Positions 4,419-24,169 of a stretch of 64,000 nt of DNA are shown one piece after another. The stretch lies in assembly GCA_021613535.1 (NCBI GenBank), contig CP075493.1:1612001-1676000 (forward strand), given 5' to 3'. How positions within the stretch are numbered: the first letter of the stretch is position 1; every line of letters begins with the position of its first letter. Under the pieces are notes generated by a model that was not told the origin of the DNA, ran no database searches, and saw only the letters and a list, made by a program, of their open reading frames with translations. The DNA is from Adineta vaga (Eukaryota > Animalia > Rotifera). The translations under genes were made by a program, and so were the position numbers.

Positions 4419-7400
4419 ATGTCAGGAGAATCTGCATTGGATCCTCAAACAATAATTCGATTGGCAGAAGAAAAAATTCGTGTTAAAACAATTGCATTAG
4501 GTCTTCGTGTAACGGAATTTTTTCATGATTTCGATCGTCTACGGTCAGGTTATGTAACATCATCTCAATTTAAACGGTACTTATTTCAATAGAATTTTTG
4601 TTAATCTTCATTCTTTTTCTTTCGTAATCTAGATGTTTGGATACTAATCTTCGTCTTCAATTAACACCTGACGAAGAAAATTTACTCTTTCAAAAATATG
4701 ATCTTAAACGTGATGGAAGTATTTGTTATCGAGATTTTTGTGATGTGATCAATCGAAGTAAGTTTTTATGAAACAAACTAATCGAATTCTATTTCAAATA
4801 ATAATACCTTCTAGAATATCCTGAAACAACGATCACTGCTCATCCAGAAAGTTTAACAAATGCTGCTCCACCCTATCTGAATTCATGGCGTTCAACTCGT
4901 CATATTGGTACGCAAGATGAAAGTGAACGTTTAAAAGATGTTCTTCAACGTATTGCTATTTATTGTAAACAACGTCGTATTGATGTGTTAACTGCAATGG
5001 AACATTATGATAAACATCAAATGGGTGAAATCACTGATAGTCAATTCTATCGTGCTTATGTTGGACCAGAATTAAATGAAGCTGAAATGACACTTCTTCG
5101 TGATAAATATTCTGATCCAAGCAAACCAGGTTTAATGAATTATTTAAATTTCGTTCAAGATCTTAATCGAATTGCACGTGCTAATGAAACAACATCATTA
5201 TTTCCTACAACAAATAACGCTGATCAAACTCCATTCATTGGCGTTGAAGAACAAGTAAAAGTTCTTATAATTTTCTTTTTATCAATGTTAATTGAATTCA
5301 TATGTTTTCCTAGCCTGAACAACGTTCAATTCAAGAAATTTTAGATAAAATTCGTATAGCAACATTTAAATATGGCATTCGTATATCAGATTTTTTCAAA
5401 GATTATGATAAATTACGTAGTGGTGTGATTACAGAAACTCAATTTGAAAATGCACTGTCATTGAGTGTACAGAAACAAGCATTTTTAAATATCAATGATA
5501 TTAAGAAATTAACGGAATATTATCGAAGACCAGATGGTCGAGTTTATTATAAAGAATTTGTTGATTCAATGGAAAATGCTTTTAATATTCCTGAATTAGA
5601 AAAAAAACCTTTGACACAAGTTCATCGACCAGGACAAGGACTCTTATCAAGAGTATGACGATTTCTAGATCTCGTCATTCAATTCTTCATATCTTTCTTT
5701 TAGCCATTGAATACGAATTTATCACCTGATGAAGAAGATCGAGTAACAGAAATCTTAGGAACGATTATTGAAAAAGTAAAAAAACGTCGTCTAGTACTTT
5801 TTCCATTTTTTAAACCCTATGATCGAGTAAGAGTTTAATTCGAAACAAAAAACTTTTCAATTTCAATTCTTCTCTTGTAGAGTAAAGCATTTACACGTGC
5901 TTGTACAAAACATCAATTCGGACGTGTACTTCGAACATTGGATTTAATTCCATCACCGTATGATTTCAATATTTTATGTAAAAAATTTGAAGATCGAGAA
6001 AATGGAGATATTAATTATGCATTATTCTGTCAAATGACTGAACAAGGTAGGATCAGTACCGGTTTTGTTTTTCTTTATTTAGAATTACATTCATCTTAAT
6101 TGAGTAGATTTTGTGGCGATTAAAATTGAAGCGGAAGAAGAATATCCATGTGAACGTGCTCGAATGGATGAAGAACAAAAACGAGAAAAATTAAATATTA
6201 TTGTTGATACATCGAATATAAATCTGAATGATTTAATGGGTCGTATTCGGCATCATGTTTTAATCAATCGAATTCGTGTATGTATTTTTACACTGATGAA
6301 TTTATTTAAGTGTTCTTTTTTTCGTATAGGTAAAAGAATTTTTTGAAGATTTCGATCCTCTTCGTTTGGGAACCATTAGTCAAGCACGATTTATTCGTGT
6401 TTTGTCTAGTTTAGGTCTTACAGGTCTTGATGGTGTACCACTAACCGAAACACAAATGTTTGCTCTATGTAATCATTATCGTCATCCTGAACAACGTGAT
6501 CTTATTCAATGGAAACAATTCGAAAGTGATGTGGAATCAGGTTGAGAACTTTCATCTAAATCAATCAAGGATTTTGATTTTGTTTTTTTTTATTTAAATA
6601 GTTTTTACATTATCTGATTTGGAAAAAGCACCAACAGTTCAAGTTTCACCTCAAACAATCTATGAAATGCCAACAACTGGAACACCTGATTGGACAAATA
6701 TTGATCCATATAATAAAGAAGAATTACATCAAGCAATGGAAGCATGGAAAGCAAGTTGTGATCAACGACGACTCAATGTTTATCAACCATTGAAACAATT
6801 CGATAGGTAATTATTTGAATTCATATTCGATTGGAAAGTAAATCATCGTTTTTCTAGACATAATCGTGGTCATGTTACTCGAGGACAATTTCGTCAATGT
6901 TTAGCTATTGCTGGTTTACCTTATACTCCAAAACAATTAGAAGCAGTTGAAGCTGCTTTTATGGATGATGATGGTTTTGCTTATCGTCGTTTTCTTGAAT
7001 GGATTCAACCACGTCGTATCGATCCACTTCGTTACAATATTTTACAAAAAGAACTTCAAGATTTAAATAAACAAAAAGTTCTACCTGAAACAAAACCATT
7101 AAGAAGTATTCAAGATGTTTTACAGAAGATTAAAGGACAAGTAAATCGATTTATTATTATCTAATTAAGAAAAATTCTTTTTCCAAAAAACGAAAATAGG
7201 TATTTCGTCGTCGTATACGTCTCTATGAATGGTTAAAAGATCATGATAAACTAAATTGTGGTCGATTGCCATTTGATACATTTCGTCGTGCATAAACCCA
7301 TGTCAATTAGAATTAATGGAAAGTGAATTGTCTTTATTGGAAGATTAGTAAGTTGAATTTTGATTATTTTTTTGAGGAAAATTTCACTTCATTTTGTTCA

Positions 7401-9346
7401 TGAAGAGATTTACCATCGAAGAAATCCAGTAAACTTTGTACAGTTGTTTCAGCAATGTTTTTTAGAGCTTCTTCTGTAAGAAATGCTTGATGGGATGTAA
7501 TAATTGTATTAGGCATTGAGATTAAACGAGCTAATGTATCATCTTCCATGACCTTGAAACGAAAAGATTTTATAATAAGAGAATTTCTATCGATCAAAGT
7601 ATTTTACTTGTTGACTAAAATCATTGAAAAAGTATTTCTTCTCAAATTCATATACATCTAAAGCAGCACCTCGTAATTTTCCTGCTTTGAGACAATCAAC
7701 AAGTGCTTTTGCGTCAACTAATCCACCTCGACTTGTATTAACTAAAAGAGCTGTTGGTTTCATTTTTTCTAAAGATTCTTTATTAATCAAATGATAAGTT
7801 GATTCAAGTAATGGAGCATAAATAGATACTAGAAACAAAAAAAGAAATCTTAGAATTTTCTAAAGAAAAGATCTTATTCACATACCAATATCACTTTGTT
7901 GAAGTAATTCATCCTTTGTAACATAGGTAAAACCTTTTTCTTTGGCTGCTTTCTCATCCGGATAGATATCATGAGCTAAAACTTTGCAACCAAAACCCAA
8001 AAATATATTAATAGCACACATTCCAATACCACCCGTTCCAATAATACCGACAGTTTTACCAAAAAGATCGATACCAACAAGACCATCTAATGTAAAATTA
8101 TGTTGTTTCGTACGAAAGAATGCATGATGTAAATTTCGATTGAGAGAAAGTAAAAGAGCAACTGAATGTTCGGCAACTGCATAAGGTGAATAACGAGGTA
8201 CACGACATATTTTAAGTCCAAATTTATCAGCTGTTTCGAGATCAACATTATTAAAACCTGCACTTCGTAAAGCAATAAGTTTTACTGAATGACATTGTTT
8301 ATGTAATTGTTCGAGAATATTTGCATCGAGAATATCATTTACAAAGACACAAATAGCATCGAAACCTTGAGCTTCATCAACTGTTTCATCAGTTAATTTA
8401 CTTTCAAGAAATGTAAAACGAAGTTTTGTTTGACCATTTAATGCTTTGAGGGCTTGTTTGAAAGTTTTTTCATCATAAGTTTTCGAATCAAAAAATAGAA
8501 CTTTGTATTGTGACATTGATTTCTTGAGAAAACTAAAGATGAAAAATAAGAATATACATCTATTGACTGATGAATTCAATCTGAGTATTTTTATTTAGTT
8601 AAATGTACTTACAGTATAGAATCTTATTTCGTTATAGTAACAACGTTTGAGTCAGAGAGAAAGAGAAAAACAAACGGTAACGAAAACGTTGTCTCTCTCT
8701 CTTTTATAAACGAATAGAACGACAAAATCTAAAGAGCAGGAAAGAGAGAAAAAAAGAAACACATACGAATCGTAATGTTTTGTCGTGGTAACGATTGATG
8801 TATTCTTATATGTGAATTGATTTAGTTACCGATCACGTGTGGATGTCAATGCTATTGATTATAAGAAATTTTGTGAAGAAATTGAATCGATATTTACAAC
8901 AGATTTTCTGGAAAAAAATCCTTTGGTTGATTCTGAACAATATGTTCCGATAAAAGATGCAGCAAATATTCGAATGGATCCTGATAAAGAAGATCGAATT
9001 AAAGTTCTAATGGAAAAAATGGCAAAACGAGTTAGTCAAATAGTTTGTTCTATGTATATTACATCATTTCTATTTGTTTGTTTCTTTTGAAAAGGTTCAT
9101 GTTCGTCGTTTTCAATTATTTCCTTTATTCGAAGATTTTGATCGTGTCCGTAATGGTCATGTTACACAAAGTCAATTCTTACGTGTTCTAAATGATCTGG
9201 GCTTATTAACATTATTAAGTGGATTTGAAAAAGATAATTTATTGGAAAAATTTCGTGTTCGTATTGGTGGACGTGATGATATGGATTATTTGACATTCTG
9301 TCATGAACTTAATACTTTAGCTGGTTTTGAAGCTGGTATACCATAA
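4419..9346 (+). CDS. Multi-EF-hand repeat protein (EFCAB6-like, probably ciliary); apparent 1-nt frameshift near 7292
   Basis: Repeated degenerate EF-hand pairs (FFHDFDRLRSGYVTSSQFKR, FFKDYDKLRSGVITETQF, FFEDFDPLRLGTISQARF, LFEDFDRVRNGHVTQSQFLR) in exons joined by short introns. A 1478-nt intron (7348-8825) holds a nested gene. Stop at 9344-9346. The exact start codon is uncertain. Confidence 0.75.
7364..8516 (-). CDS. D-lactate dehydrogenase / D-2-hydroxyacid dehydrogenase (bacterial LdhA-like), nested antisense in the EF-hand gene intron
   Basis: Exons 8516-7886, 7828-7608, 7552-7364; GT-AG introns of 57 and 55 nt. Motifs LIALRSAGFNNVDL, YSPYAVAEH, Rossmann GIIGTGGIG, NTSRG (Arg), DVYEFE (Glu), TSHQAF (His). 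Confidence 0.92.
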
Positions 9347-9481
9347 ACAATTTTATTAATGAATTCTGTGCCTGAAATGAAGACATACATGCTTGCACAC
9401 ATTTTATTTTTTTTTCTTTCTTATTCTTTTCCGCAAAAAGAAAATAAAATCAATCAATCAAAGATATGTCTCAATGATAAT

Positions 9482-12400
9482 TTAAGAATAATGAATTTGT
9501 CGAAATGATGATCCTGTAGTCGTCGGCGCCGTTGATGAACGAAATCTTTAGAAAAGAAAGAAATAAAGATGAATGAGAAAGAATGTCAAGAACAATTACC
9601 GTTTTTGTTTTTTCATAAAACATTTAGCAGGTGCAAATGATTGACGATTTCGAAATCGACCAGATATAATTGTAATCGGCCGAGTACGAACACAATATTG
9701 TTCACTTTGAATTTCTAACCAAAGATGATATTTTCCATTGATCAGATCATAGACAACTGCCTGATAAGTATTTGTATCATATTCGCCATGTAAATGAATT
9801 GCATGTGTTAAAACATTTTCTGATAGCAACTACAAAGAAAAAACAAAAGAATTAAATTTCAATGTTATGTTATCTATTATACTCGAAATCCGATTAATTT
9901 ATCTGTTTCATCTTCTAAATGAGGATGTTCCCAATCAACTATAACAGTTCCTGTTTGTCCATTATCTATACGTCGAAATATTCCTGGTTTAATACCAGGC
10001 CAAGTGAATTTCACACCACGTGACAATGGACTAGCAATATTTTTATCATGACTCAATGCTTGAACATGAACTGTATATTCTTCACATGCTGAACCAGTCG
10101 TTAATGTATAAGTTAATTGATCATGTGAAAGAATTGCTAGGAGACGATTATTCAAATAAATCTTATAACCTATTATACTAAGTTCACCAGATGTTGGTGA
10201 TGGACGCCATTCAACTGTTACATGATCATGCATACGTTCTCTAAATAGAAATAAATAGAAATGAAAAAAATCAAAGATATCATCATTAGAAAGAAAAATG
10301 ATGTTACCGAATTGCAACAATTGGAGCATTGGGTGGAACACTCATTTGAATAGTTTTCTTTTCGGATGTATATAATATTTCACCATCTCTACCTGCAGCT
10401 AAAACCATAATTGTATAACTAAATCCAGGTTTCAAATCTCGCAAAGTCTTTAAAAATAGAAATGAAAATTAGAACAAAATCGATTTCCTTTTCTTTCTTC
10501 ATCTTACCACATGATGCTTTTGTTTGGATACTTGCATAGTTTGTATTTCATTATTATTTAAACAAGTCGAATGAATATAATATGAACGTATATCTCTCAT
10601 CGGTATAAATGATTGCCAATCAATGGAAAGTTTCTCTTCATTGATAGTTTCAATTTGTACGGGGATAAATCGATTTTCGTCATGACTATTACCAATAAAA
10701 CGTACTGTTGGTGTTGTTATAACTGATAATGTTTGTGACATAATAGAACGTGTACGTTGAGGATTATTTGTTAGAGCACAAATATTCACGTCATATGTTC
10801 GATTTATATTTGAAGAGATTTCTGCGCGACGTAAATGAACTTCAGCCATATTTCCTGCTTTTTTTCCCTCGATATATAATTGAAAACCCATTACTGGTAT
10901 TCCATAAGATTTCGGTTCAGACCATTCAACAGCAAAACTTGTCTCCGATGTTTTAACAAGCCATAGTTTCGGTGCATCGGGTTCACCTGGTATTGGCATT
11001 TTTAATTGTTTATAATAATGTTTGATATTATCATTTGTCATCAGAATTATTTCAATAATATAAAATTCTTTTTCATCAGATACATCTAAATACATTTATT
11101 ATAGATAATGATGAGATTTTTTTGGAAAGGGAAACTCACCTATTGTAAATGATGTTTCAGTAGGTTTGAATGTTTTCTGTTGAATACGTAGATCTTTGGA
11201 TGATTGCCATTGAAGAATAATATGTGAAATTGTTTTAATATCATCCAATATTGTCCAATGTACATTGATCTTTCCCAAAGGTTTCACTTCATTTCTTTGT
11301 TCAACAGTATTTTCTTTAGTCACATGATGATGAAATTCGAAATTCGCTTGAAAAGAACGAAGAAGATCTAAATACTCAACGGAAATTTAACAAAAAATCA
11401 AATGATATTTTTATTTTTACCTTCATCTGTTAGCATTTGAATACGTAATTTTTCTGACGGTGTTTCATCAACTTCATCACTTTGAACAAACTATTTCGAA
11501 AAGATAAACAAAAATTATGCTAGATAATTACGTTCTTTACCGTTTCATTTAAGTATTCATTTTGAATAGTCGTTCGTGCAACTAATCGTACTTTGTATTC
11601 TTCACCTGATTGACATTCTGTCAATGTACATTGATATTGATCATCATCTAAACTATTGTATTTTTCTCCATTAATTTCCACTCTATAACCAAGTAATTTT
11701 CGATGTATTGGAACTTTTTCATGTAATCTTTCCGGATGATTCATACTATTGAACATATTTGGTTTATTCCAGGTTAAATCAATTGTTGTTGTTGTATAAC
11801 CAGTTAAACAAATTTCTGGTCTTTCACATAAACCCGAAATATGATAACAGACAGAAGTTGTTTCACTGATTGTTAAACGAATTTCTTTTTCATTGGTTTC
11901 ATCGTCAAGATTAACTTTCGTACGAAATATGGAATCAAGTGATATTCTATATAAACCCAATTGTAAAATTCCAGGTATGACTGCATTCATAGTATTACAA
12001 TCAAGTTCTAAACTATGCTCATCACCGCCTTGTTCCAATTTCCATCGAAGTATTTGACTAATCAGTTCTGTTGAACCGTAAGCTTTCGGTAACATCCATT
12101 CAAGTTCGATAGATTCAATCGTTGCACTACGAATACAAAGTTGACTTGCTGGTTCGCAACCACTTGTTGTAAATGTTAAGCTTTGACTGATTAACCAAGT
12201 GGATGGTTCTAATGATTTTGGTAATTGTGAAAGATCAGAAAAATTCATTTCATTTAAATATTCATCTGTAATTGCATAAATTGTTACATGATATTCGGTA
12301 CGTTCATTTAGATTTGATAGTAAAAAGTCTGTAGTATCAGGTGTTAAGTCAAAAATAATATCTTTTGAATGTTTTCTGGTAGAAATTGATTCACAATGAA

Positions 12401-15400: not shown

Positions 15401-18400
15401 TTCTGCCGAAAATCGAGTATCTTTTGGTGATAAATTCACACTTTGTGCAACATCGTCTACATATAATTCAAAATGCTCAATAAGATCTATTGAACTCGTT
15501 GGTTCGACTTCAATTTTTCCATATAATTTATTCGGATATTGTATCGAAGCTGATAGAATAATCTTCGTAGTATTCCAAACAGATACAAGTTCCTATTCAA
15601 TATCGATCAGAACTAAAAAATCAAATCTTTAAAACTTACATTCATTGCTTCTAAATCTTCATTTTCCATTACAAATGTTGGACTAGAACAATAAATAATC
15701 TAGAATAAAGTCGAATATTCCGCATCAAAACAAACCTGCTTGTTATCACAGTACTTGAAAGTTTTTCATTTTCAATTGCATAAGCACGTAGAAGATGAAA
15801 ACCTGATTGATCAAAATATACACCATGATCGGGATTGTAAATCTAAATATTTCATATTCAATTGAATTTTTTCGATTAGAAAAATTTCTTTACATGAACA
15901 TTATCATAATGTCGTGTTGGAAGTGTTCCATCAAGTGTATAAAATATCTTCATATCGGAAGTGGAACATCGGAAATGGACTTGTGTTTGAAATGGACTTA
16001 ATGTTTCGATTTCTTCAATTATTTCAGGAGATTTTAGACATTTTTCTATTGAATGAATAGAAAACTATTGAATTTTATAGATCAATATTTACTTTCACTT
16101 TGAATAATACTATTTGAATAAACAATAACTGTTGCTGTAGTATTGAAATGATCAGATCGAATTGTAAATTGTCCACATTGATGAAATGTATATAAATAAT
16201 GAATATCATGAACATATTGTTCAATTGGTCGATCGAGACGATTGATTTCATCGAATTGTCGCTGATTCTCATTTGATTCTACTGAAATTCGATGGTATTG
16301 ATTATGATCTAATAAAATCCATGAAATTGTTTCATTCTAAAATAGATTTTTCCTCAAAAAACAAAGTCTTCAAAAAAAAAGAATAAAAATCAACTTGAGC
16401 GATATGTAAAACATTCGGAACAAATTGTCGATGTGTAACGAGAAAACAAGCTTGACTAAATGGTGGATCAATAACAATGGTTGATATTAAACGATCCTGT
16501 TATGAAAAGAAAGAAAACAATCATATTTTGCATTTTCTCTATAATATATTTACTTCTTCTGAACAAGTCACTCGTTCGAATTCTAAAACAACGAAAAGAA
16601 TTCACTTGAAATCGATATTATGAATTAAAATTTACCGGGATTAGCAAAATAGAATACTCCTGGCATGATACATTCAACAGCGAGACATTGTCGATTACGT
16701 CCTGATACGGCTCGATCATGACACGAACGTAAATCTTCTAAAGTTTCATTTGAACGTAATTGTATTAAACCAAATCGAATAATTTGTTCAAATTGCCATA
16801 TAATAAAATCATTGATATTCGTTATGATTGCTTGAGAATCAAAATTACTATAATGAATAAATTTATAATGAAAACGAATTTCTGGTACAACAATAATAGC
16901 TAATGGTGTTGAATTCATTGATATATTTCCATCGAGTTTATCACTAATTGTAGAAAAATAATAAATTCCTGTTCGATGAAATTGTTGCATGAAACAATTG
17001 ATACTATTTGTTTGTGGTTGAAATATTGGTTTATATAATTCTAAATGATTTCCATATTCATCTGTACGATAGATATTTGCAAAGATTTTTGACATGGATT
17101 CAAACCAAACTTGATCATTTTGATTAATAATTAATGTATTTGGTTCAAAGATATTTTCTTCGTTATATGAAACATGATGATTCTATTAATAAAAATCAGT
17201 GATTAAAATTTTAGTTTTATCGACATTTCCGCGCATTGTAAAGTCTACATTTATGATGGTCCTTGTTACGCGGAAATGTCGTATCAAGAAAATAGTGTAT
17301 TTGTTGTTTCTTACATGAGTACTACTTTCAACAATGACATTCAAAACTACATCATTTCGATTATCATTGTATGCAAAACTGTATAGGCCATGTTGTGGAA
17401 TATGAAGAAGAAATCCTTCACAATTATGGAAATAAGAACGAAAAAATGGTTCGACTCTGACACATTTATGCATCGCTAAAATATAAAGTTTAATAATATT
17501 TATACTTTTAGTATAAATTTAATCGTACAACAATCGAATATGCCAGTTAAACCACCAGCGACATCAGGTACAACAGATGAATTAGCATCAACAGTAATTA
17601 ATACTGGTTCTTCTTGAGAATCCGTTATTTTCCATTGAAATTCAACCAAATCATTCGTATTCATTTTTAAAACTAAACAAAATTTCTATGTTCGACTTCA
17701 TCATTCTTCATAACTCACTTAATTGATCACCAAAAACTGGAAATGAATGAATAGTTCTTTTTGGTTCAACAATAATTGTTCCGATATGATTTGTTGCTGT
17801 TTTAAAACAAAAAATACCTGTTTGAGTAAATTTATGAATCATATAACCACGATAGGATGGATCATATGGCCAAAAGAAATGTTCACCATTCGTTTTCAAC
17901 TAAAATAACGTCGATAAAATTTTCAAAAAAGAAAAAATGACATTTGAAAAACAAACTTCAATTGATTGTTTATTTTCATCGATAAAAAAAGGATCAATTT
18001 GTACAATTGTTTGTTTCTCTTTTGTATTCCATTCGAATATAATCGAATCATTTTGTTCAATTATAACTCGATTTGGTTGAATATTCATATCAGTAATTTC
18101 TATACATTCAATTTGATATTTTTCCTTAATTAGACATGTTATTATATCATGAATTTGATTTGTTTGTGTTAAACGAAAGAAAAATGATGTTCCATATTCA
18201 TAAAATGTTTTTCGAAAATTTCCTTTTGATAATGATGATTCAATTGTATAAAGACCACCAGATATTGGACAATATTTATTTTCTTCTATTCGATAATGTG
18301 TATTTGATCTTGATGTCCATTCAAATTCAATAGTATCACCTTGATGTAAAATTACTTTTTGACTTGCTTTAATATCAGTTAAAGTTAATTTTAATGGATT

Positions 18401-18793
18401 TTGATGAAGAATTAAACAATTGTTTTCACAACATTCGTTGGGATATTGACGTGATTTCGATAAAATTTCACGTTGTGATGATAAAATGATACAAAAATAG
18501 AATTTTTTTGTTGAACAATGAAGATTAAATGAAAGTTGAATACGTCTTTGATTTTTCGATGTTTTCCTATTGATATTAAGTAATTCAATTCCATTATTAA
18601 TTCGATAATATTCATTTCCATCTTTATAAACTTGAAAAACATCATATTCATCTTTATCATCATTCCGAAATTCAATCGTATCACTACAATGAATACGTTG
18701 AGATATCAGATCAGGAAATGAACCATTCCCTATATCAATGGTATGAATGACATCAAGTTCATCATCGGATGGATTATTTTCTGTTGAAATCAT
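9482..18793 (-). CDS. Large multi-exon protein: cupredoxin-like repeats, a CHB_HEX_C/Fn3-associated domain, then many fibronectin type III domains
   Basis: ATG 18793 (MISTENN). Repeats such as IQPNRVIIEQNDSIIFEW, HKFTQTGIFCF, QQFHRTGIYYFS, CIMPGVFYFANP. IFYTLDGTLPT near 15915-15945. FN3 signatures (VEWSEPKSYGIPVMGFQLY, LTWNKP...GYRVEING, VEWRPSP...GYKIYLNN). The last exon ends QIHYS-TAA at 9482. Confidence 0.7.
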
Positions 18794-18918
18794 TGAAAAC
18801 TGTAACTCGAAAGAGAAAGAATGTTTTATTACTGATTTGTTGAATATAGTTAACAAAAATAATGTTATTGAATTTCTTGAGGTTTCCGCATGTATAATGA
18901 CTTTTTTTTTCAATCAAA

Positions 18919-18931: not shown

Positions 18932-19098
18932 AGACTAAGTTGTAATCAAGTACAATACATAACATCATGAATAATCTGCTCAGATCTTTGTTAATCGATC
19001 AAAAAGAAAACATTACAAACATTGATCATAATATTTTTGTTCTGATTTTTATTGATTTTGTCAAAAAATACTAAGGATGTATATATATATATATTGAA

Positions 19099-21190
19099 CT
19101 AAAGTTTTTTAAGTGAAAACTTTGATCTCGCTCGCATCTTTGAACGAGAGAGAAAAGATTTCGATTGTAGATCATATCGCTTTGAAGTATGACAAAAGGC
19201 AGCTGAATGATGCATTTCAATATTCTTTGAATGGAAACAAATCGAACAAATATGTCGCCGTGGACATGACTTCAATCGACATCTTTTCATACGATTATTA
19301 TAATTGCGACATATCGAATCGTTTGTTTGTAAGTTTTCAGTGATGTTCATTTGTTTTAAGTGATTGTTCATAAGAAAAGAAAAGTCGGAAAACAAACTAA
19401 GATGAGTCATTTGACTCACATGTTGACGAATAGTCGCTTCATAAACTAATATATGCTCCAGTAAACTAGGCTTTTGTCTATAAAGATGGGTTATACGATC
19501 GAAATGAGCATCAAGTTCAGGTCCACGATGTTTGAAAAGATATAGAATCGCTTTACGAAAAGAACTAAATGCAGTAGTCCAATCAACATACGATTCGATT
19601 TTCGTTATTTTTTTATGTAGACAACAATGTATGTTTTCTGGTAGAAAAGTACTCATGTCAATATTGTCACTGTTAATTAGTTTTTCCCATTGATGGATAC
19701 TGCCAATATACGGTTTGTTGACATCAGCAATAAGTCGAACCATACGTGTATCCTTGTCTTCTATCCATTTACGACGAATATATGCAGTTTGAGCTGCTAT
19801 ATCATCGTTTCCAATTGCTTGATCAGTTAACGAATCTTCTGTTGATGGTGAGAATGTACTAAGAAAAGAGTGTAACATGTTTTCATCATTGACTGAACAT
19901 GATGGTGTAGAAGGAAGACTCAACGAACATTCAGCAAAAAATGCATCGAGTTCTTCAGATGAAAGACTGTCTACTGTATGACATGGTGATATATGTTCTA
20001 AATAAGTTTTTAAGTTCTTGTAGTATTCAATAACTTATTTTAGTATAGACATACCTGAATCGAGCATCAGCATGTCGACAAGTGATGTCTGCATATCGAA
20101 ATGACTCATATCAATTTTGATAGAACTGTCATTCTTTTGACATGTACAAAAATGTGCTTGTTGACCAAAAGGAATCCAAGAAGGTAACGCGAAATTAACT
20201 GATTCTGCAATATTAAATCCACTATTGAAACCCCAATGATAAGCTCGAGGAAAAGTAACAATGATATCATTAGGACATTGTTCGATTCGATAAACAGGAA
20301 TATTATAGCTTTGAATAAGTTCATTTGGATTTGGAAAAAGAGTTTTATGTCGTAATGGTGCTTGACAATGAGATGTTTGAAGAATATCAGAGTCATGAAG
20401 ACATTGTTCAAGTTGATCAGCATTTGAAGATGGTATTATATACCAGAATTTTGATGATCCTTCATGCATATAATTCATTGAAAAGAGATCACTTTCTTCA
20501 GTATGTATGCTAAACATAGAAGCAAACATACCAACATGAAGAAAGGGTGTTGTAATCCCTAAAATAAAATTTAAGATAGAAACTGTAAAAATCTTTTCCT
20601 TCCATCTCATAGTAAATGCTGTCAACTAAGTGTAATCTTTTATCGTATATGATTCTGTAATTACCTTTAATCTGTTGATTAGTTAATGAAAGAAGAGATT
20701 TCGATGGTATATCATTGAGATTAAAGATTGTTTCTGTTGGTGGAAAGAGACTATGTTCAATTTCAGTAGCATATCGGATGACACGTTTCGCGATCGAATT
20801 CGACTTAATCATTTTCCAAAATTCAGATTCAACATCGACAACTCCTTGTGGAGCTCGATTCTGAGGACGATGTGCAAAATCAACGAATATTTTCATTTGC
20901 ATAGCTTCATTTTCATTGATAGTTTTCCGTTGTGAATTAGTAACACGCGAAACTAACGATGAAAGTGGAATAATACTTTGTCGACTAATTGAAAAGGTTG
21001 AATTGATAGATGATAGAGGGAGAGTTTTCATTTTAGTCCATTCTCGTGGTGGAATAATTTTACATGCACCATACGAAGCAATAAGCTTTTCATTGTTATG
21101 TATATATGATAGGAGATCGATAAACTCGGACATAGTTGGTATCAATACTGGAATAGATGGAATTGTTGCAGCTTCATTTACTTGACTCAT
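19099..21190 (-). CDS. KDM4: KDM4/JMJD2-type JmjN-JmjC histone demethylase fused to a DIRS/Ngaro Gag-like domain with a Cys/His zinc finger (642 aa)
   Basis: Exons 21190-20665, 20558-20055, 19997-19099 total 1929 nt and stay in frame; GT-AG introns of 106 and 57 nt. JmjN IPVLIPTMSEF...GACKIIPPREW. Fe ligands HTE...YHWGFN; 2OG Lys in KFWY; Zn ligands CQAPLRHK and CTC; NIAESVNFA. C-terminal DWTTAF...FKHRGPELDAH...YEATIR and CRNYNN...C...C...HICSIC...H...C. Confidence 0.85.
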
Positions 21191-22935: not shown

Positions 22936-24169
22936 TTATTCTTCAATAAAATGCTCATTTTTGTCTATATCAGAATGATTTGTTTCATTGAGATTATCCA
23001 TTGAAGACGGAGAATAAGGTCGAATAAATTCATCTTTATCCTGACAATCATTGGATAATTCAATATTATTATGAATTGATTTTGTTGACATAAGCATTTC
23101 ACGTTCTTTCGTATTTCGCCATTTCATTCGACGATTTTGAAACCTGAATAATCAAAATAAATTCCTTCCAAGAATCATTTCATTAATAGTTTTTCTTACC
23201 AAATTTTCACCTGTGAATCTTTTAGATTAAGTCGTTGAGCTAATTTCTTTCTTTCGGGTTTATTGATATATTTTTGTTTTGAAAATGCTACTTCAAGACC
23301 TTTTCGTTGTTGATCCGAAAAGACTGCACGTCTTAACATTCGTGGTTGAGTTCTATTTCGAAGATCGATTGGCCAAAATGAATCTGTTGATGGTACATAG
23401 AGTCCATTGAACATTGTTGATGATGGATTAGTTCCAAAATAATGACCTTTGAAAAAACAAAGAATACATTTTCGTTTGTTTTGATAATAGATCGAATACA
23501 TTAATTGAATAAAAAGAAAAAATAATAATATATCTATACAATAGAAAATAAGCCTAAAGTGAAGAAATCAAAACAAACGACTAGATTGAATGAAATCATT
23601 CATTTAGAATTCGTTTTTCTTCAAATGAAATTCGAAAATATTGAATTATTTACCAAGTAATGGTCGAAGATTTGGACGCCAAAGTGGATTGGATGGTAAT
23701 GAAGAATGATGTGATCGATTTGTTGCCATTATTTGATGGAAAAGATGTTCATTGCTAATTCCTTGAGATAAATCATAGGATAGATTACTATTTGAACAAT
23801 TGGTTAATGATTGTTTGATAAGAGGAGATTGAACAAGCAATGGTTCACCTGAAGAAACAGATGAATTTGTTGAATTCGGTGATGTAACATGTATATCAAC
23901 TAAATAGAATCACTCTGTTATTTTTTATTCGTTTTATCAAAATATCTTTTACCTTTATGTTTCAAATCTTCATCTGATTCATTACCGATGTCAAATGATG
24001 AATCATTATCTGAATTTCCATGAACATTACCAAGTATAGTATCGACACCAAATTTGAGAATTCTTGATCTTGTTGGTTCATCAGTATTCTTTAATCCATT
24101 TCTCTTCATTTTGGTTAATAATGGTAATAAATTCGACGTTTGTTCACAACGACTATTATTCGTCATCAT
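22936..24169 (-). CDS. Dbx: Developing brain homeobox (Dbx) transcription factor
   Basis: Four exons (24169-23953, 23899-23654, 23446-23200, 23143-22936). eh1-like LKFGVDTIL. Homeodomain [62 protein letters not shown] matches the Dbx family. Confidence 0.92.

What the first reader, a model, noticed from the sequence alone, without database searches (positions are those of the whole stretch)
19099..21190. KDM4 histone demethylase spliced to a DIRS/Ngaro retrotransposon Gag-like domain
Seen: a canonical 57-nt intron (19998-20054) joins the JmjC exon in frame to an 899-nt exon, giving one 642-aa ORF. Fe, 2OG and structural Zn ligands are all present. Established: animal KDM4A-C carry PHD and Tudor readers after the JmjC domain. 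Recognised by eye: the C-terminal exon instead has QWEKLI...IDMSTFL, KIESYVDWTTAF...AILYLFKHRGPELDAHFDRITHLY, ILVYEATIRQHV and a C-x2-YN-x5-C-x4-C-x3-H-x-C-x2-C...H-x4-C finger. That is the layout of ORF1/Gag of tyrosine-recombinase (DIRS/Ngaro) retrotransposons, especially fungal-type ones. No RT, RNase H or recombinase is nearby, so this looks like a captured domain. Inference: an H3K9/H3K36 demethylase retargeted by a transposon nucleic-acid-binding module. It could be a transposon-derived anti-silencing factor or a domesticated host regulator of TE chromatin.
Basis: partly seen in the sequence, partly recalled or inferred. Interest (0 to 1): 0.92.

Follow-up and report, generated by a model that had tools for sequence, protein, structure and literature searches.

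The report
Histone demethylase fused to retrotransposon ORF1
A bdelloid rotifer (Adineta-type) gene joins an apparently active KDM4-type histone demethylase to a zinc-finger domain taken from the first ORF ("Gag-like") of a Ngaro tyrosine-recombinase retrotransposon; related rotifers keep the fusion under purifying selection, so it looks like a transposon domain recruited into a chromatin enzyme.

Summary
On the minus strand, three exons (21190-20665, 20558-20055, 19997-19099) are separated by GT..AG introns of 106 and 57 nt and give one 642-codon frame. Exons 1 and 2 encode JmjN and JmjC, with all Fe, 2OG and Zn ligands aligned to human KDM4.

A profile of the exon found 154 representatives (E<=1e-3), mostly C-terminal parts of ~400-aa ORFs from Basidiomycota and Glomeromycota. 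Four of these ORFs lie directly upstream of an RT/RNase H ORF and a tyrosine-recombinase ORF. One such element (L025) has the A1...B1-A2-B2 split direct repeats typical of Ngaro. Profile against profile, rotifer copies versus verified-element ORF1s gives 99.4% probability, E 1.6e-21 over 177 columns, covering a helical core and a CCCH+CCHC double zinc finger.

The exon is single-copy in its genome, and no Ngaro recombinase was found there. The order JmjC then ORF1-like exon, with the same donor site, recurs in three other Adineta-type contigs. Core dN/dS is 0.20-0.33.

Not shown: the spliced transcript (no RNA data could be obtained), any enzyme activity, or what the domain binds. "Gag" here means position only; no capsid-like fold was found. 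The scan had not followed this up before.

The parts
20665..21190 (-). Exon 1: start codon at 21190, JmjN domain (aa 14-47) and the mixed region up to the conserved 2OG-binding Tyr (Y140)
   Evidence: Pfam JmjN 4.6e-9. Aligns to KDM5A/KDM4 N-terminal parts. In-frame stop 9 nt upstream of the ATG.
20559..20664 (-). Intron 1, 106 nt, GTAATT...TTTTAG, phase 1
   Evidence: The exon-1 frame closes and the exon-2 frame opens only if this intron is removed.
20055..20558 (-). Exon 2: JmjC catalytic domain with Fe ligands H194/E196/H283, 2OG ligands N204/K212 and the structural Zn site C240/H246/C313/C315
   Evidence: Pfam JmjC 3.9e-33. Best solved relatives are KDM4C/D/A at 1e-36, with all ligands aligned. 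Residue numbering.
19998..20054 (-). Intron 2, 57 nt, GTATGT...ATTTAG, phase 1; if retained, the frame stops after 6 more codons (stop codon at 20037-20035)
   Evidence: The donor CGATTC(A/G)G|GT lies at the same codon position in L020 and L018. L027 ends its JmjC frame at the equivalent Gly, but its DNA was not read.
19822..19997 (-). Start of exon 3: poorly conserved Ser/Thr-rich linker (aa 344-402)
   Evidence: Alignment of four rotifer copies. Linker identity is 22-31% and NG86 dN/dS 0.5-1.2. No conserved Met.
19342..19821 (-). Exon 3: helical core of the Ngaro-ORF1-derived domain (aa 403-562), with family-wide conserved W447, W483, R501, E504, L505, D530, R534
   Evidence: Family alignment A4 gives the invariant and near-invariant columns. 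AF2 pLDDT is 93-98 over most of the region. hhalign to verified-element ORF1. tblastn of L016 ORF1 hits window 19677-19180 at E 8e-14.
19192..19311 (-). Exon 3: double zinc finger, CCCH (C573, C583, C588, H592) directly followed by CCHC (C594, C597, H607, C612)
   Evidence: All eight ligands are invariant or >=90% conserved across 72 family members. 125 of 155 retrieved proteins carry the CCCH pattern. UniProt labels P0001, P0015, P0016 and P0050 as C3H1-type.
19099..19191 (-). Exon 3: basic C-terminal tail and stop codon (19101-19099)
   Evidence: The tail is variable between rotifer copies.
19048..19053 (-). AATAAA polyadenylation signal downstream of the stop; a (TA)n run lies between the two

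Best explanation
This is a single three-exon host gene of an Adineta-type bdelloid rotifer. It encodes a KDM4-like JmjN/JmjC histone lysine demethylase with a complete catalytic centre. The PHD/Tudor readers of canonical KDM4A-C are replaced by a domain exapted from the C-terminal two-thirds of ORF1 (the positional 'Gag') of a Ngaro-type tyrosine-recombinase retrotransposon. That domain is a ~160-residue helical bundle followed by a CCCH+CCHC double zinc finger.

Shown here: the reading frame and ligands; the homology to ORF1 of complete Ngaro elements; the single-copy state without RT or YR; the same gene order in three other rotifer contigs; and purifying selection on the captured core.

Inferred, from what CCCH and CCHC knuckles do in other proteins: the module binds single-stranded nucleic acid, most likely RNA, and so brings H3K9me3/H3K36me3 demethylase activity to particular transcripts or loci instead of to methyl-lysine marks. 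I give roughly 0.85 to the fused, domesticated architecture and roughly 0.35 to this specific targeting mechanism.
For: - **Gene model:**
- **Catalytic domains and ligands:**
- **Homology of exon 3:** the profile search gave 154 hits; named ones are Basidiomycota and Glomeromycota. Two hits are fused to RVT_1.
- **Element context:** ORF1 is followed by RT/RH and YR in L014, L015, L016 and L025. The YR is confirmed by phrog_1 integrase at 1.3e-9 and by the HxxR / W / Y boxes. RT YMDD and RNase H DAS/TDN/ADALSR motifs are in the ORF2 consensus. L025 has A1/B1-A2-B2 split direct repeats.
- **Profile against profile:** hhalign of rotifer copies versus verified-element ORF1s gives 99.4%, E 1.6e-21.
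- **Conserved ligands:** invariant Zn ligands and core residues across 72 sequences.
- **Structure:** a confident model once the family alignment was used (pLDDT 86.7). The ESM-Atlas shape match is to a Basidiomycota 438-aa cluster (TM 0.60).
- **Copy number:** single copy, and no Ngaro-type YR in the 100.8-Mb genome.
- **Conserved fusion:** JmjC exon, then intron, then ORF1-like exon on one strand in L018, L020 and L027. The donor is conserved, phase-compatible acceptors exist, and there is no conserved Met in the downstream exon.
- **Selection:** core dN/dS is 0.20-0.33, against ~1 in the linker.
- **Canonical paralogues:** PHD-bearing KDM4 paralogues exist elsewhere in the genome, so this is an extra, re-tooled paralogue.
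- **Context:** H3K9me3 covers TEs in A. vaga (PMC8885841).
Against: - No transcript evidence. All public runs that hold the stretch are DNA contigs spanning the introns, so the 20055|19997 junction is a prediction. It is backed by a BRAKER model in A. steineri that used only cross-species RNA hints.
- Differences between the assembly and the 2013 DNA contigs are mostly non-synonymous: 10:4 in exon 3 and 16:5 overall. None falls on a conserved column.
- One related copy (L027) has Gln in place of the third Fe ligand, so catalysis is not maintained in every lineage.
- Nucleic-acid binding by the module, its target, and demethylase activity are all untested.
- The helical core has no solved structural relative, so its role is unknown.
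Confidence: 0.65

Rival explanations
1. There are two separate products. The JmjN/JmjC gene ends by intron retention a few codons after the donor, like the short KDM4D/E forms. The ORF1-derived exon is then an independent domesticated gene that merely lies downstream.
For: No RNA evidence for the junction. A. steineri P0001 and the metagenome ORF calls P0004 and P0156 are annotated as stand-alone proteins. Each intron carries an early stop.
Against: The stand-alone calls come from ORF callers that ignore splicing, or from a contig that ends 1 kb upstream. The downstream exon has no conserved start codon, and its frame stays open through a fast-evolving linker in all four copies. Same-strand adjacency, a conserved GT donor at the same phase and frame-compatible acceptors persist at dS around 1 or more. 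The A. steineri NCBI model P0002 joins the two parts.
Confidence: 0.12
2. The fusion is real, but the captured module works by protein-protein contact. As an ORF1 fragment it binds or poisons ORF1 assemblies of incoming Ngaro-like elements, as Gag-derived restriction factors such as Fv1 do, or it multimerises the demethylase. It would not act as a nucleic-acid reader.
For: The best-conserved part is a large helical bundle of unknown function. The genome holds no Ngaro-type element, which would fit successful exclusion. One lineage has lost an Fe ligand but keeps the ORF1-like exon.
Against: All eight zinc ligands are as strictly conserved as the helical core, which argues that the fingers are used. 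No partner element is present in the genome to restrict. There is no direct evidence either way.
Confidence: 0.12
3. The direction of capture is the reverse, or the ancestry is shared. The helical + CCCH/CCHC domain would be an old cellular domain that Ngaro elements acquired, and the rotifer exon descends from a cellular gene, not from a transposon.
For: The nearest outgroup in the quick tree is a Glomeromycota clade (P0020, P0050, P0056), for which no adjacent RT or YR was found. L023 also lacks them.
Against: Support for that sister grouping is weak (SH-aLRT 80, quick tree, long stem branch). The Gigaspora locus is flanked by unreadable or low-complexity stretches, and the same protein sits on 9 contigs in G. 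margarita, i.e. it is repeated. Full-length domain coverage also occurs in P0022, which is fused to an RT. No cellular multi-domain context other than the rotifer JmjC fusion was seen among 154 hits.
Confidence: 0.08
4. It is a decaying transposon remnant read through by chance, with no function.
For: There is an excess of non-synonymous differences between the assembly and the 2013 contigs.
Against: Four diverged copies keep intact frames, all zinc ligands and core dN/dS of 0.2-0.33. The exon is single-copy and has no element remains around it.
Confidence: 0.03

Closest known systems
KDM4/JMJD2 histone demethylases (human KDM4A-E, yeast Rph1)
   Same: JmjN and JmjC without an ARID/PHD insert. 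The Fe, 2OG and Cys3His Zn ligands are all present. The best solved-structure matches are KDM4C/D/A (1e-36).
   Different: There are no PHD or Tudor readers. Two canonical PHD-bearing paralogues lie elsewhere in the genome (L004, L005). The C-terminus is instead a transposon ORF1 domain. The preference for KDM4 over KDM5 is only about 4 orders of E-value, and activity is untested.
ORF1 ('Gag-like') of Ngaro tyrosine-recombinase retrotransposons (Goodwin and Poulter type; fungal Ngaro as surveyed in PMC3783388)
   Same: The helical core plus the CCCH+CCHC double finger are homologous (hhalign 99.4%, E 1.6e-21). The relatives sit in elements with RT/RH, YR and A1...B1-A2-B2 repeats.
   Different: Only the C-terminal ~180-240 residues are present. 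It is single-copy, has no RT, YR or repeats, is spliced to a host enzyme, and is under purifying selection in several rotifer lineages.
Host genes that fused a chromatin enzyme or regulator to a transposon-derived domain (SETMAR: SET + mariner transposase; SCAN domain of zinc-finger proteins from a Gypsy Gag). Recalled from my own knowledge, not tested here.
   Same: The same evolutionary logic: exonisation of a TE protein domain downstream of a host chromatin gene.
   Different: The donor is a tyrosine-recombinase retrotransposon ORF1, for which my literature searches found no reported domestication. The host partner is a demethylase.
Bdelloid-specific chromatin innovations: N4CMT-chromodomain and amplified SETDB1 (PMC8885841)
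   Same: The same organism group, and the same theme of re-tooled H3K9me3-linked machinery made from foreign or duplicated parts.
   Different: Those write or maintain silencing. This gene would erase H3K9me3/K36me3, and its added module comes from a retrotransposon, not a bacterium.

Membership tests
KDM4/JMJD2 demethylases | JmjN followed by JmjC with no ARID/PHD insertion between them | tested here: met
   Pfam JmjN at aa 14-47 and JmjC in exon 2; nothing else between them.
KDM4/JMJD2 demethylases | Fe(II) triad HxE...H and 2OG-binding Tyr/Asn/Lys | tested here: met
   H194, E196, H283, N204 and K212 align to the KDM4C ligands. Y140 aligns to the conserved Tyr. Numbering.
KDM4/JMJD2 demethylases | Structural Zn site Cys-His-Cys-Cys | tested here: met
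   C240, H246, C313 and C315 align to KDM4C.
KDM4/JMJD2 demethylases | Closer to KDM4 than to other JmjC subfamilies | tested here: inconclusive
   KDM4C/D/A at 1e-36, against KDM5A 1e-32 and Rph1 1e-29. No phylogeny was made.
KDM4/JMJD2 demethylases | C-terminal double PHD and double Tudor (KDM4A-C type) | tested here: not met
   No PHD or Tudor in exon 3. These domains are seen in paralogues L004/L005. KDM4D/E also lack them, so this does not exclude the subfamily.
KDM4/JMJD2 demethylases | H3K9me3/H3K36me3 demethylase activity | not testable with these tools
   Needs an enzyme assay.
Ngaro retrotransposon ORF1 | Sequence homology to ORF1 of elements that also carry RT/RNase H and a tyrosine recombinase | tested here: met
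   L016 ORF1 against the window, E 8e-14; 99.4%, E 1.6e-21. Element context.
Ngaro retrotransposon ORF1 | Conserved CCCH + CCHC double zinc finger at the C-terminus | tested here: met
   All eight ligands are conserved in 72 sequences, including the rotifer ones.
Ngaro retrotransposon ORF1 | Full-length ORF1 (~400-430 aa, including the N-terminal part) | tested here: not met
   Matches cover ORF1 residues ~214-416 of 427-455. The rotifer linker has no similarity to the N-terminal part.
Ngaro retrotransposon (as a mobile element) | RT/RH and YR ORFs downstream, split direct repeats, multiple copies | tested here: not met
   No RT or YR in the window. No Ngaro-type YR in the genome. One copy of the domain. 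The gene is therefore a derivative, not an element.
DIRS1-type elements | Methyltransferase domain, inverted terminal repeats, YR upstream of or overlapping RT | tested here: not met
   In the related elements, ORF2 is 566-650 aa with RT and RH motifs only, the order is ORF1-RT/RH-YR, and the repeats are direct and split with no inverted pairs.
Retroviral/LTR-retrotransposon Gag (capsid fold) | CA-like two-domain helical fold | tested here: inconclusive
   No match in PDB (Foldseek best E 2.3; VIA-align best Z 4.6) or in BFVD (best E 1.7). Absence of a match does not prove a different fold.

The most novel reading that the evidence does not exclude
An active H3K9me3/H3K36me3 eraser in bdelloid rotifers is guided by a retrotransposon ORF1 RNA-binding module to transposon or other nascent transcripts. 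This would be a transposon-derived counterweight to the bdelloid 4mC/SETDB1 silencing loop, for example limiting heterochromatin spread or licensing transcription of small-RNA precursor loci. The module may have been acquired horizontally from a fungal Ngaro-type element, because the genome has none of its own and the nearest relatives found are fungal.
Probability: 0.18. Interest if true: 0.85.

Novelty: new variant of a known kind. Interest (0 to 1): 0.64.

Why it matters
Domesticated transposon domains have repeatedly supplied new parts to chromatin proteins. However, I found no report of a co-opted ORF1 from a tyrosine-recombinase retrotransposon, nor of a JmjC demethylase carrying one (literature searches).

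ORF1 of these elements is called 'Gag-like' only by position and is almost uncharacterised (PMC6681497). This work defines a conserved helical + CCCH/CCHC module in it and provides a confident model.

In bdelloids, TE silencing by H3K9me3 has been rebuilt from foreign and amplified genes (PMC8885841). A KDM4 paralogue whose reader is a TE nucleic-acid-binding module is therefore a concrete, testable candidate for RNA-linked control of heterochromatin.

Tried and rejected
- **RNA evidence.** The look-up of sequencing runs listed no run on record as RNA. The four runs laid were Logan contigs that cross both introns (DNA), or covered only part of exon 2.
- **First structure model.** The AF2 model from a 3-sequence alignment was unusable (pLDDT 40.6) and was replaced by the 72-sequence run.
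- **Fold searches.** PDB by Foldseek, PDB by VIA-align wide and BFVD gave nothing above noise. No capsid, SAM-like or other known fold can be claimed.
- **PDB sequence searches.** Profile searches with the element recombinase and RT alignments gave no useful hit. The recombinase call rests on PHROGs/Pfam and catalytic motifs, and the RT/RH call on RVT_1 hits and motifs.
- **Word-indexed protein searches.** Searches with the family profile, and with P0002 restricted to the domain, returned only rotifer sequences plus P0065. No annotated full-length A. vaga protein was retrieved.
- **Own-genome searches.** No second ORF1-like copy and no Ngaro-type recombinase were found. The tool warns that an empty answer is weak.
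- **Other readers' JmjC-RRM notes.** I checked one paralogue locus (L028) and found no RRM among start-codon ORFs of 70 aa or more. This is inconclusive, because internal exons are not listed.
- **Joined protein.** No search, fold or complex prediction was run on the joined (spliced) protein. The joined frame was only counted inside scripts.
Full report
**Organism and locus.** The window is G000:C1:1612001-1676000 of a 100.8-Mb genome in six contigs. It is AT-rich (30.8% GC). The closest named proteins are from Adineta steineri, so this is an Adineta-type bdelloid rotifer. The size and six chromosomes fit the published A. vaga assembly, but that is my inference.

**Gene model.** On the minus strand, an ATG at 21190 is preceded by an in-frame TAA 9 nt upstream. 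It opens exon 1 (21190-20665).
- A 106-nt GT..AG intron (20664-20559) leads to exon 2 (20558-20055).
- A 57-nt GT..AG intron (20054-19998) leads to exon 3 (19997-19099).
- Both junctions are phase 1, and the frame is 642 codons plus a stop.
- AATAAA lies at 19053-19048.

No search or fold used the joined protein; the joined frame was only counted in scripts.

**Catalytic half.** Pfam gives JmjN (aa 14-47, 4.6e-9) and JmjC (3.9e-33). The JmjC exon's best solved relatives are human KDM4C, 4D and 4A (about 1e-36), ahead of KDM5A (1e-32) and yeast Rph1 (1e-29).

All ligands are in place in the printed alignments:
- Fe ligands: H194, E196, H283.
- 2OG contacts: N204 and K212, plus Y140 in exon 1.
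- Cys3His zinc site: C240, H246, C313, C315.

There is no ARID/PHD insert and no C5HC2 finger, so the layout is KDM4-like. The genome has at least 16 JmjC matches. Two of them (L004 on C4, L005 on C1) are followed by PHD and extended-PHD fingers; these are the canonical KDM4A-C-type genes. The window gene is therefore an additional, diverged paralogue (42% identity or less to any other copy in the JmjC exon).

**C-terminal exon, within rotifers.** Pfam finds nothing in exon 3. It is single-copy in its genome by protein search and by family-profile search. Close relatives (45-60% identity) are A. steineri P0001, P0002, P0005 and P0006, and unnamed metagenome proteins P0003, P0004, P0007 and P0156.

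In every contig with enough upstream sequence, the JmjC exon lies just upstream on the same strand:
- L020 (A. steineri): the NCBI model P0002 joins the two parts.
- L018 (ENA): this contig also holds the JmjN exon.
- L027 (JGI).

Further points support a single spliced gene:
- The donor CGATTC(A/G)G|GT sits at the same codon and phase in the window, L020 and L018. L027 ends its JmjC frame at the equivalent Gly, but I did not read its DNA.
- Introns differ in length (57, 312 and ~700 nt) and all carry early stops.
- Frame-compatible AG acceptors with pyrimidine tracts exist.
- The downstream exon has no conserved Met, and its frame stays open through a fast-evolving linker.

Nei-Gojobori dN/dS is 0.20-0.33 in the 200-codon core for all six pairs, with dS 0.7-1.7 (near saturation). 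It is 0.5-1.2 in the linker. So the captured core is under purifying selection, and the fusion predates the split of at least three Adineta-type lineages or paralogues (tree).

**C-terminal exon, outside rotifers.** A profile of three rotifer sequences, scored against 1.84 billion representatives, gave 154 proteins at E<=1e-3. After the rotifer ones, the hits (1e-13 downwards) are mostly ~400-aa proteins matched over their last ~130-220 residues.

Named examples are Agaricomycetes and Glomeromycota:
- Agaricomycetes: Cyclocybe, Peniophora, Fistulina, Jaapia, Sphaerobolus, Gymnopus, Schizopora.
- Glomeromycota: Funneliformis, Gigaspora, Racocetra, Cetraspora, Dentiscutata.

Two long hits carry RVT_1 downstream of the domain.

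**Genomic context of those hits.**
- L016: ORF1 (427 aa), ORF2 (566 aa), ORF3 (330 aa).
- L025: 416, 650 and 329 aa.
- L014 (Peniophora) and L015 (Cyclocybe) have the same order.
- ORF3 is a tyrosine recombinase. It matches PHROG integrase at 1.3e-9, has weak Pfam Phage_integrase and SAM-like hits, and shows the GHSxRxGGAT and GRW...Y boxes in the alignment.
- ORF2 has weak RVT_1 hits and, in its consensus, YMDD plus the RNase H DAS, TDN and ADALSR motifs. It has no methyltransferase.
- In L025 the ORFs are framed by repeats A1 (4419-4705), B1 (9262-9362), A2 (9356-9623) and B2 (9669-9769), at 98-100% identity, with no inverted repeats.

That repeat pattern is the split-direct-repeat layout described for Ngaro-type YR elements (compare the A1/B1-A2-B2 patterns tabulated in PMC6681497). 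It also fits the reported concentration of fungal Ngaro in Basidiomycota (PMC3783388).

**Strength of the homology.**
- tblastn of the L016 ORF1 hits window 19677-19180 at E 8e-14.
- hhalign of a rotifer-only profile (A5) against a profile of ORF1s from verified elements (A6) gives 99.4% probability, E 1.6e-21, over 177 columns.
- In a 72-sequence alignment, the invariant or >=90% columns include W447, W483, R501, E504, L505, D530 and R534 in the helical part, and all eight ligands of a CCCH finger (C573, C583, C588, H592) immediately followed by a CCHC finger (C594, C597, H607, C612).

So the similarity is not just a shared zinc-finger motif.

**Structure.** With the family alignment, AF2 gives pLDDT 86.7. 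The model is a bundle of long helices (residues 5-160 of the 240-aa piece) plus a small zinc-finger region.
- PDB (Foldseek best E 2.3; VIA-align best Z 4.6) and BFVD (best E 1.7) give only noise.
- In the ESM Atlas, the best shape matches are a Basidiomycota 438-aa cluster (TM 0.60 over 159 residues) and a mollusc C3H1-type cluster (TM 0.46).
- The feature search agrees with this.

Hence 'Gag-like' is positional, as the literature itself says, and no capsid fold is supported.

**Origin.**
- No RT or YR match lies in the window.
- No Ngaro-type YR was found in the genome, and there is no second copy of the domain.
- In a quick ML tree, the rotifer sequences form one clade (100) on a long branch. 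It is weakly sister (SH-aLRT 80) to a Glomeromycota clade, for which I could not show element context.
- The large Basidiomycota-type ORF1 clade is separate.

Horizontal acquisition from a fungal element is possible, since bdelloids are known for it. However, the mollusc cluster shows the family also exists in animals, so I leave origin open at about 40% for horizontal transfer.

**Mechanism.** Shown here: an intact demethylase centre, a conserved TE-derived helical + double-finger module, and a conserved fusion. Inferred from established knowledge: CCCH fingers (the TTP and Nab2 classes) and CCHC knuckles (retroviral nucleocapsid) bind single-stranded RNA or DNA. On that basis, the module most likely replaces histone-mark reading with nucleic-acid-based targeting of H3K9me3/K36me3 removal. 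In A. vaga, H3K9me3 covers TEs, and KDM4 has been invoked as the eraser that silencing must override (PMC8885841). That makes TE or repeat chromatin a plausible target, but nothing here tests it.

**Caveats.**
- No transcript evidence was obtained. The A. steineri model came from BRAKER with cross-species RNA hints.
- Differences between the assembly and the 2013 DNA contigs are 10 non-synonymous to 4 synonymous in exon 3, and 16:5 overall, none at conserved columns.
- The L027 copy reads Gln where the third Fe ligand should be.

**Verdict.** I rate it a new variant of a known kind (exaptation of a TE domain into a chromatin enzyme), of good interest, with the transcript and the biochemistry still to be shown.

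Noticed in passing
L027:827-1500 (JGI metagenome contig, rotifer-like): This related JmjC + ORF1-like locus reads TYQWG where the window has AYHWG, so the third Fe ligand His is Gln. This may be a catalytically dead paralogue or lineage that still keeps the ORF1-derived exon.
   Followed up: partly
G000:C4:7066346-7066747 (L004) and G000:C1:5971431-5971775 (L005): Two KDM4-like JmjC genes are followed by PHD and extended-PHD (zf-HC5HC2H) ORFs. They are probably the canonical KDM4A-C-type pair of this degenerate tetraploid.
   Followed up: partly
G000, about ten further JmjC loci, e.g. L008-L013: There is a family of ~340-357-aa single-ORF JmjC paralogues at 29-37% identity. Other first-stage notes call some of them catalytically dead and fused to RRMs. 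At one locus (L028) I saw no RRM among start-codon ORFs, which is inconclusive.
   Followed up: partly
P0050 cluster; L022:8001-9341 (Gigaspora rosea): An ORF1-like protein is >=90% identical across five Gigasporaceae genera and sits on 9 contigs in G. margarita. No RT or YR was found next to it in the one locus read. It is either a very recently spread element or a conserved derived gene.
   Followed up: partly
L025:4419-9769 (JGI metagenome contig): An apparently complete Ngaro-type element with three intact ORFs and 98-100% identical split direct repeats (A1, B1, A2, B2), so probably recently active.
   Followed up: yes
window 19079-19098: A (TA)n run lies just after the stop codon. Two insertion variants (TATATA, TGTATA) occur in the 2013 DNA contigs.
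   Followed up: no
window 23196-23501, minus strand: An ORF with a homeodomain-like stretch (helix-3-type ending KIW) lies about 2 kb upstream of the demethylase gene, and further ORFs of the same strand lie up to 24169.
   Followed up: no
window 17900-18913, minus strand: The next downstream ORF (337 aa), and further ORFs down to 16625 with repeated, similar-looking modules, are of unknown family and were not examined.
   Followed up: no
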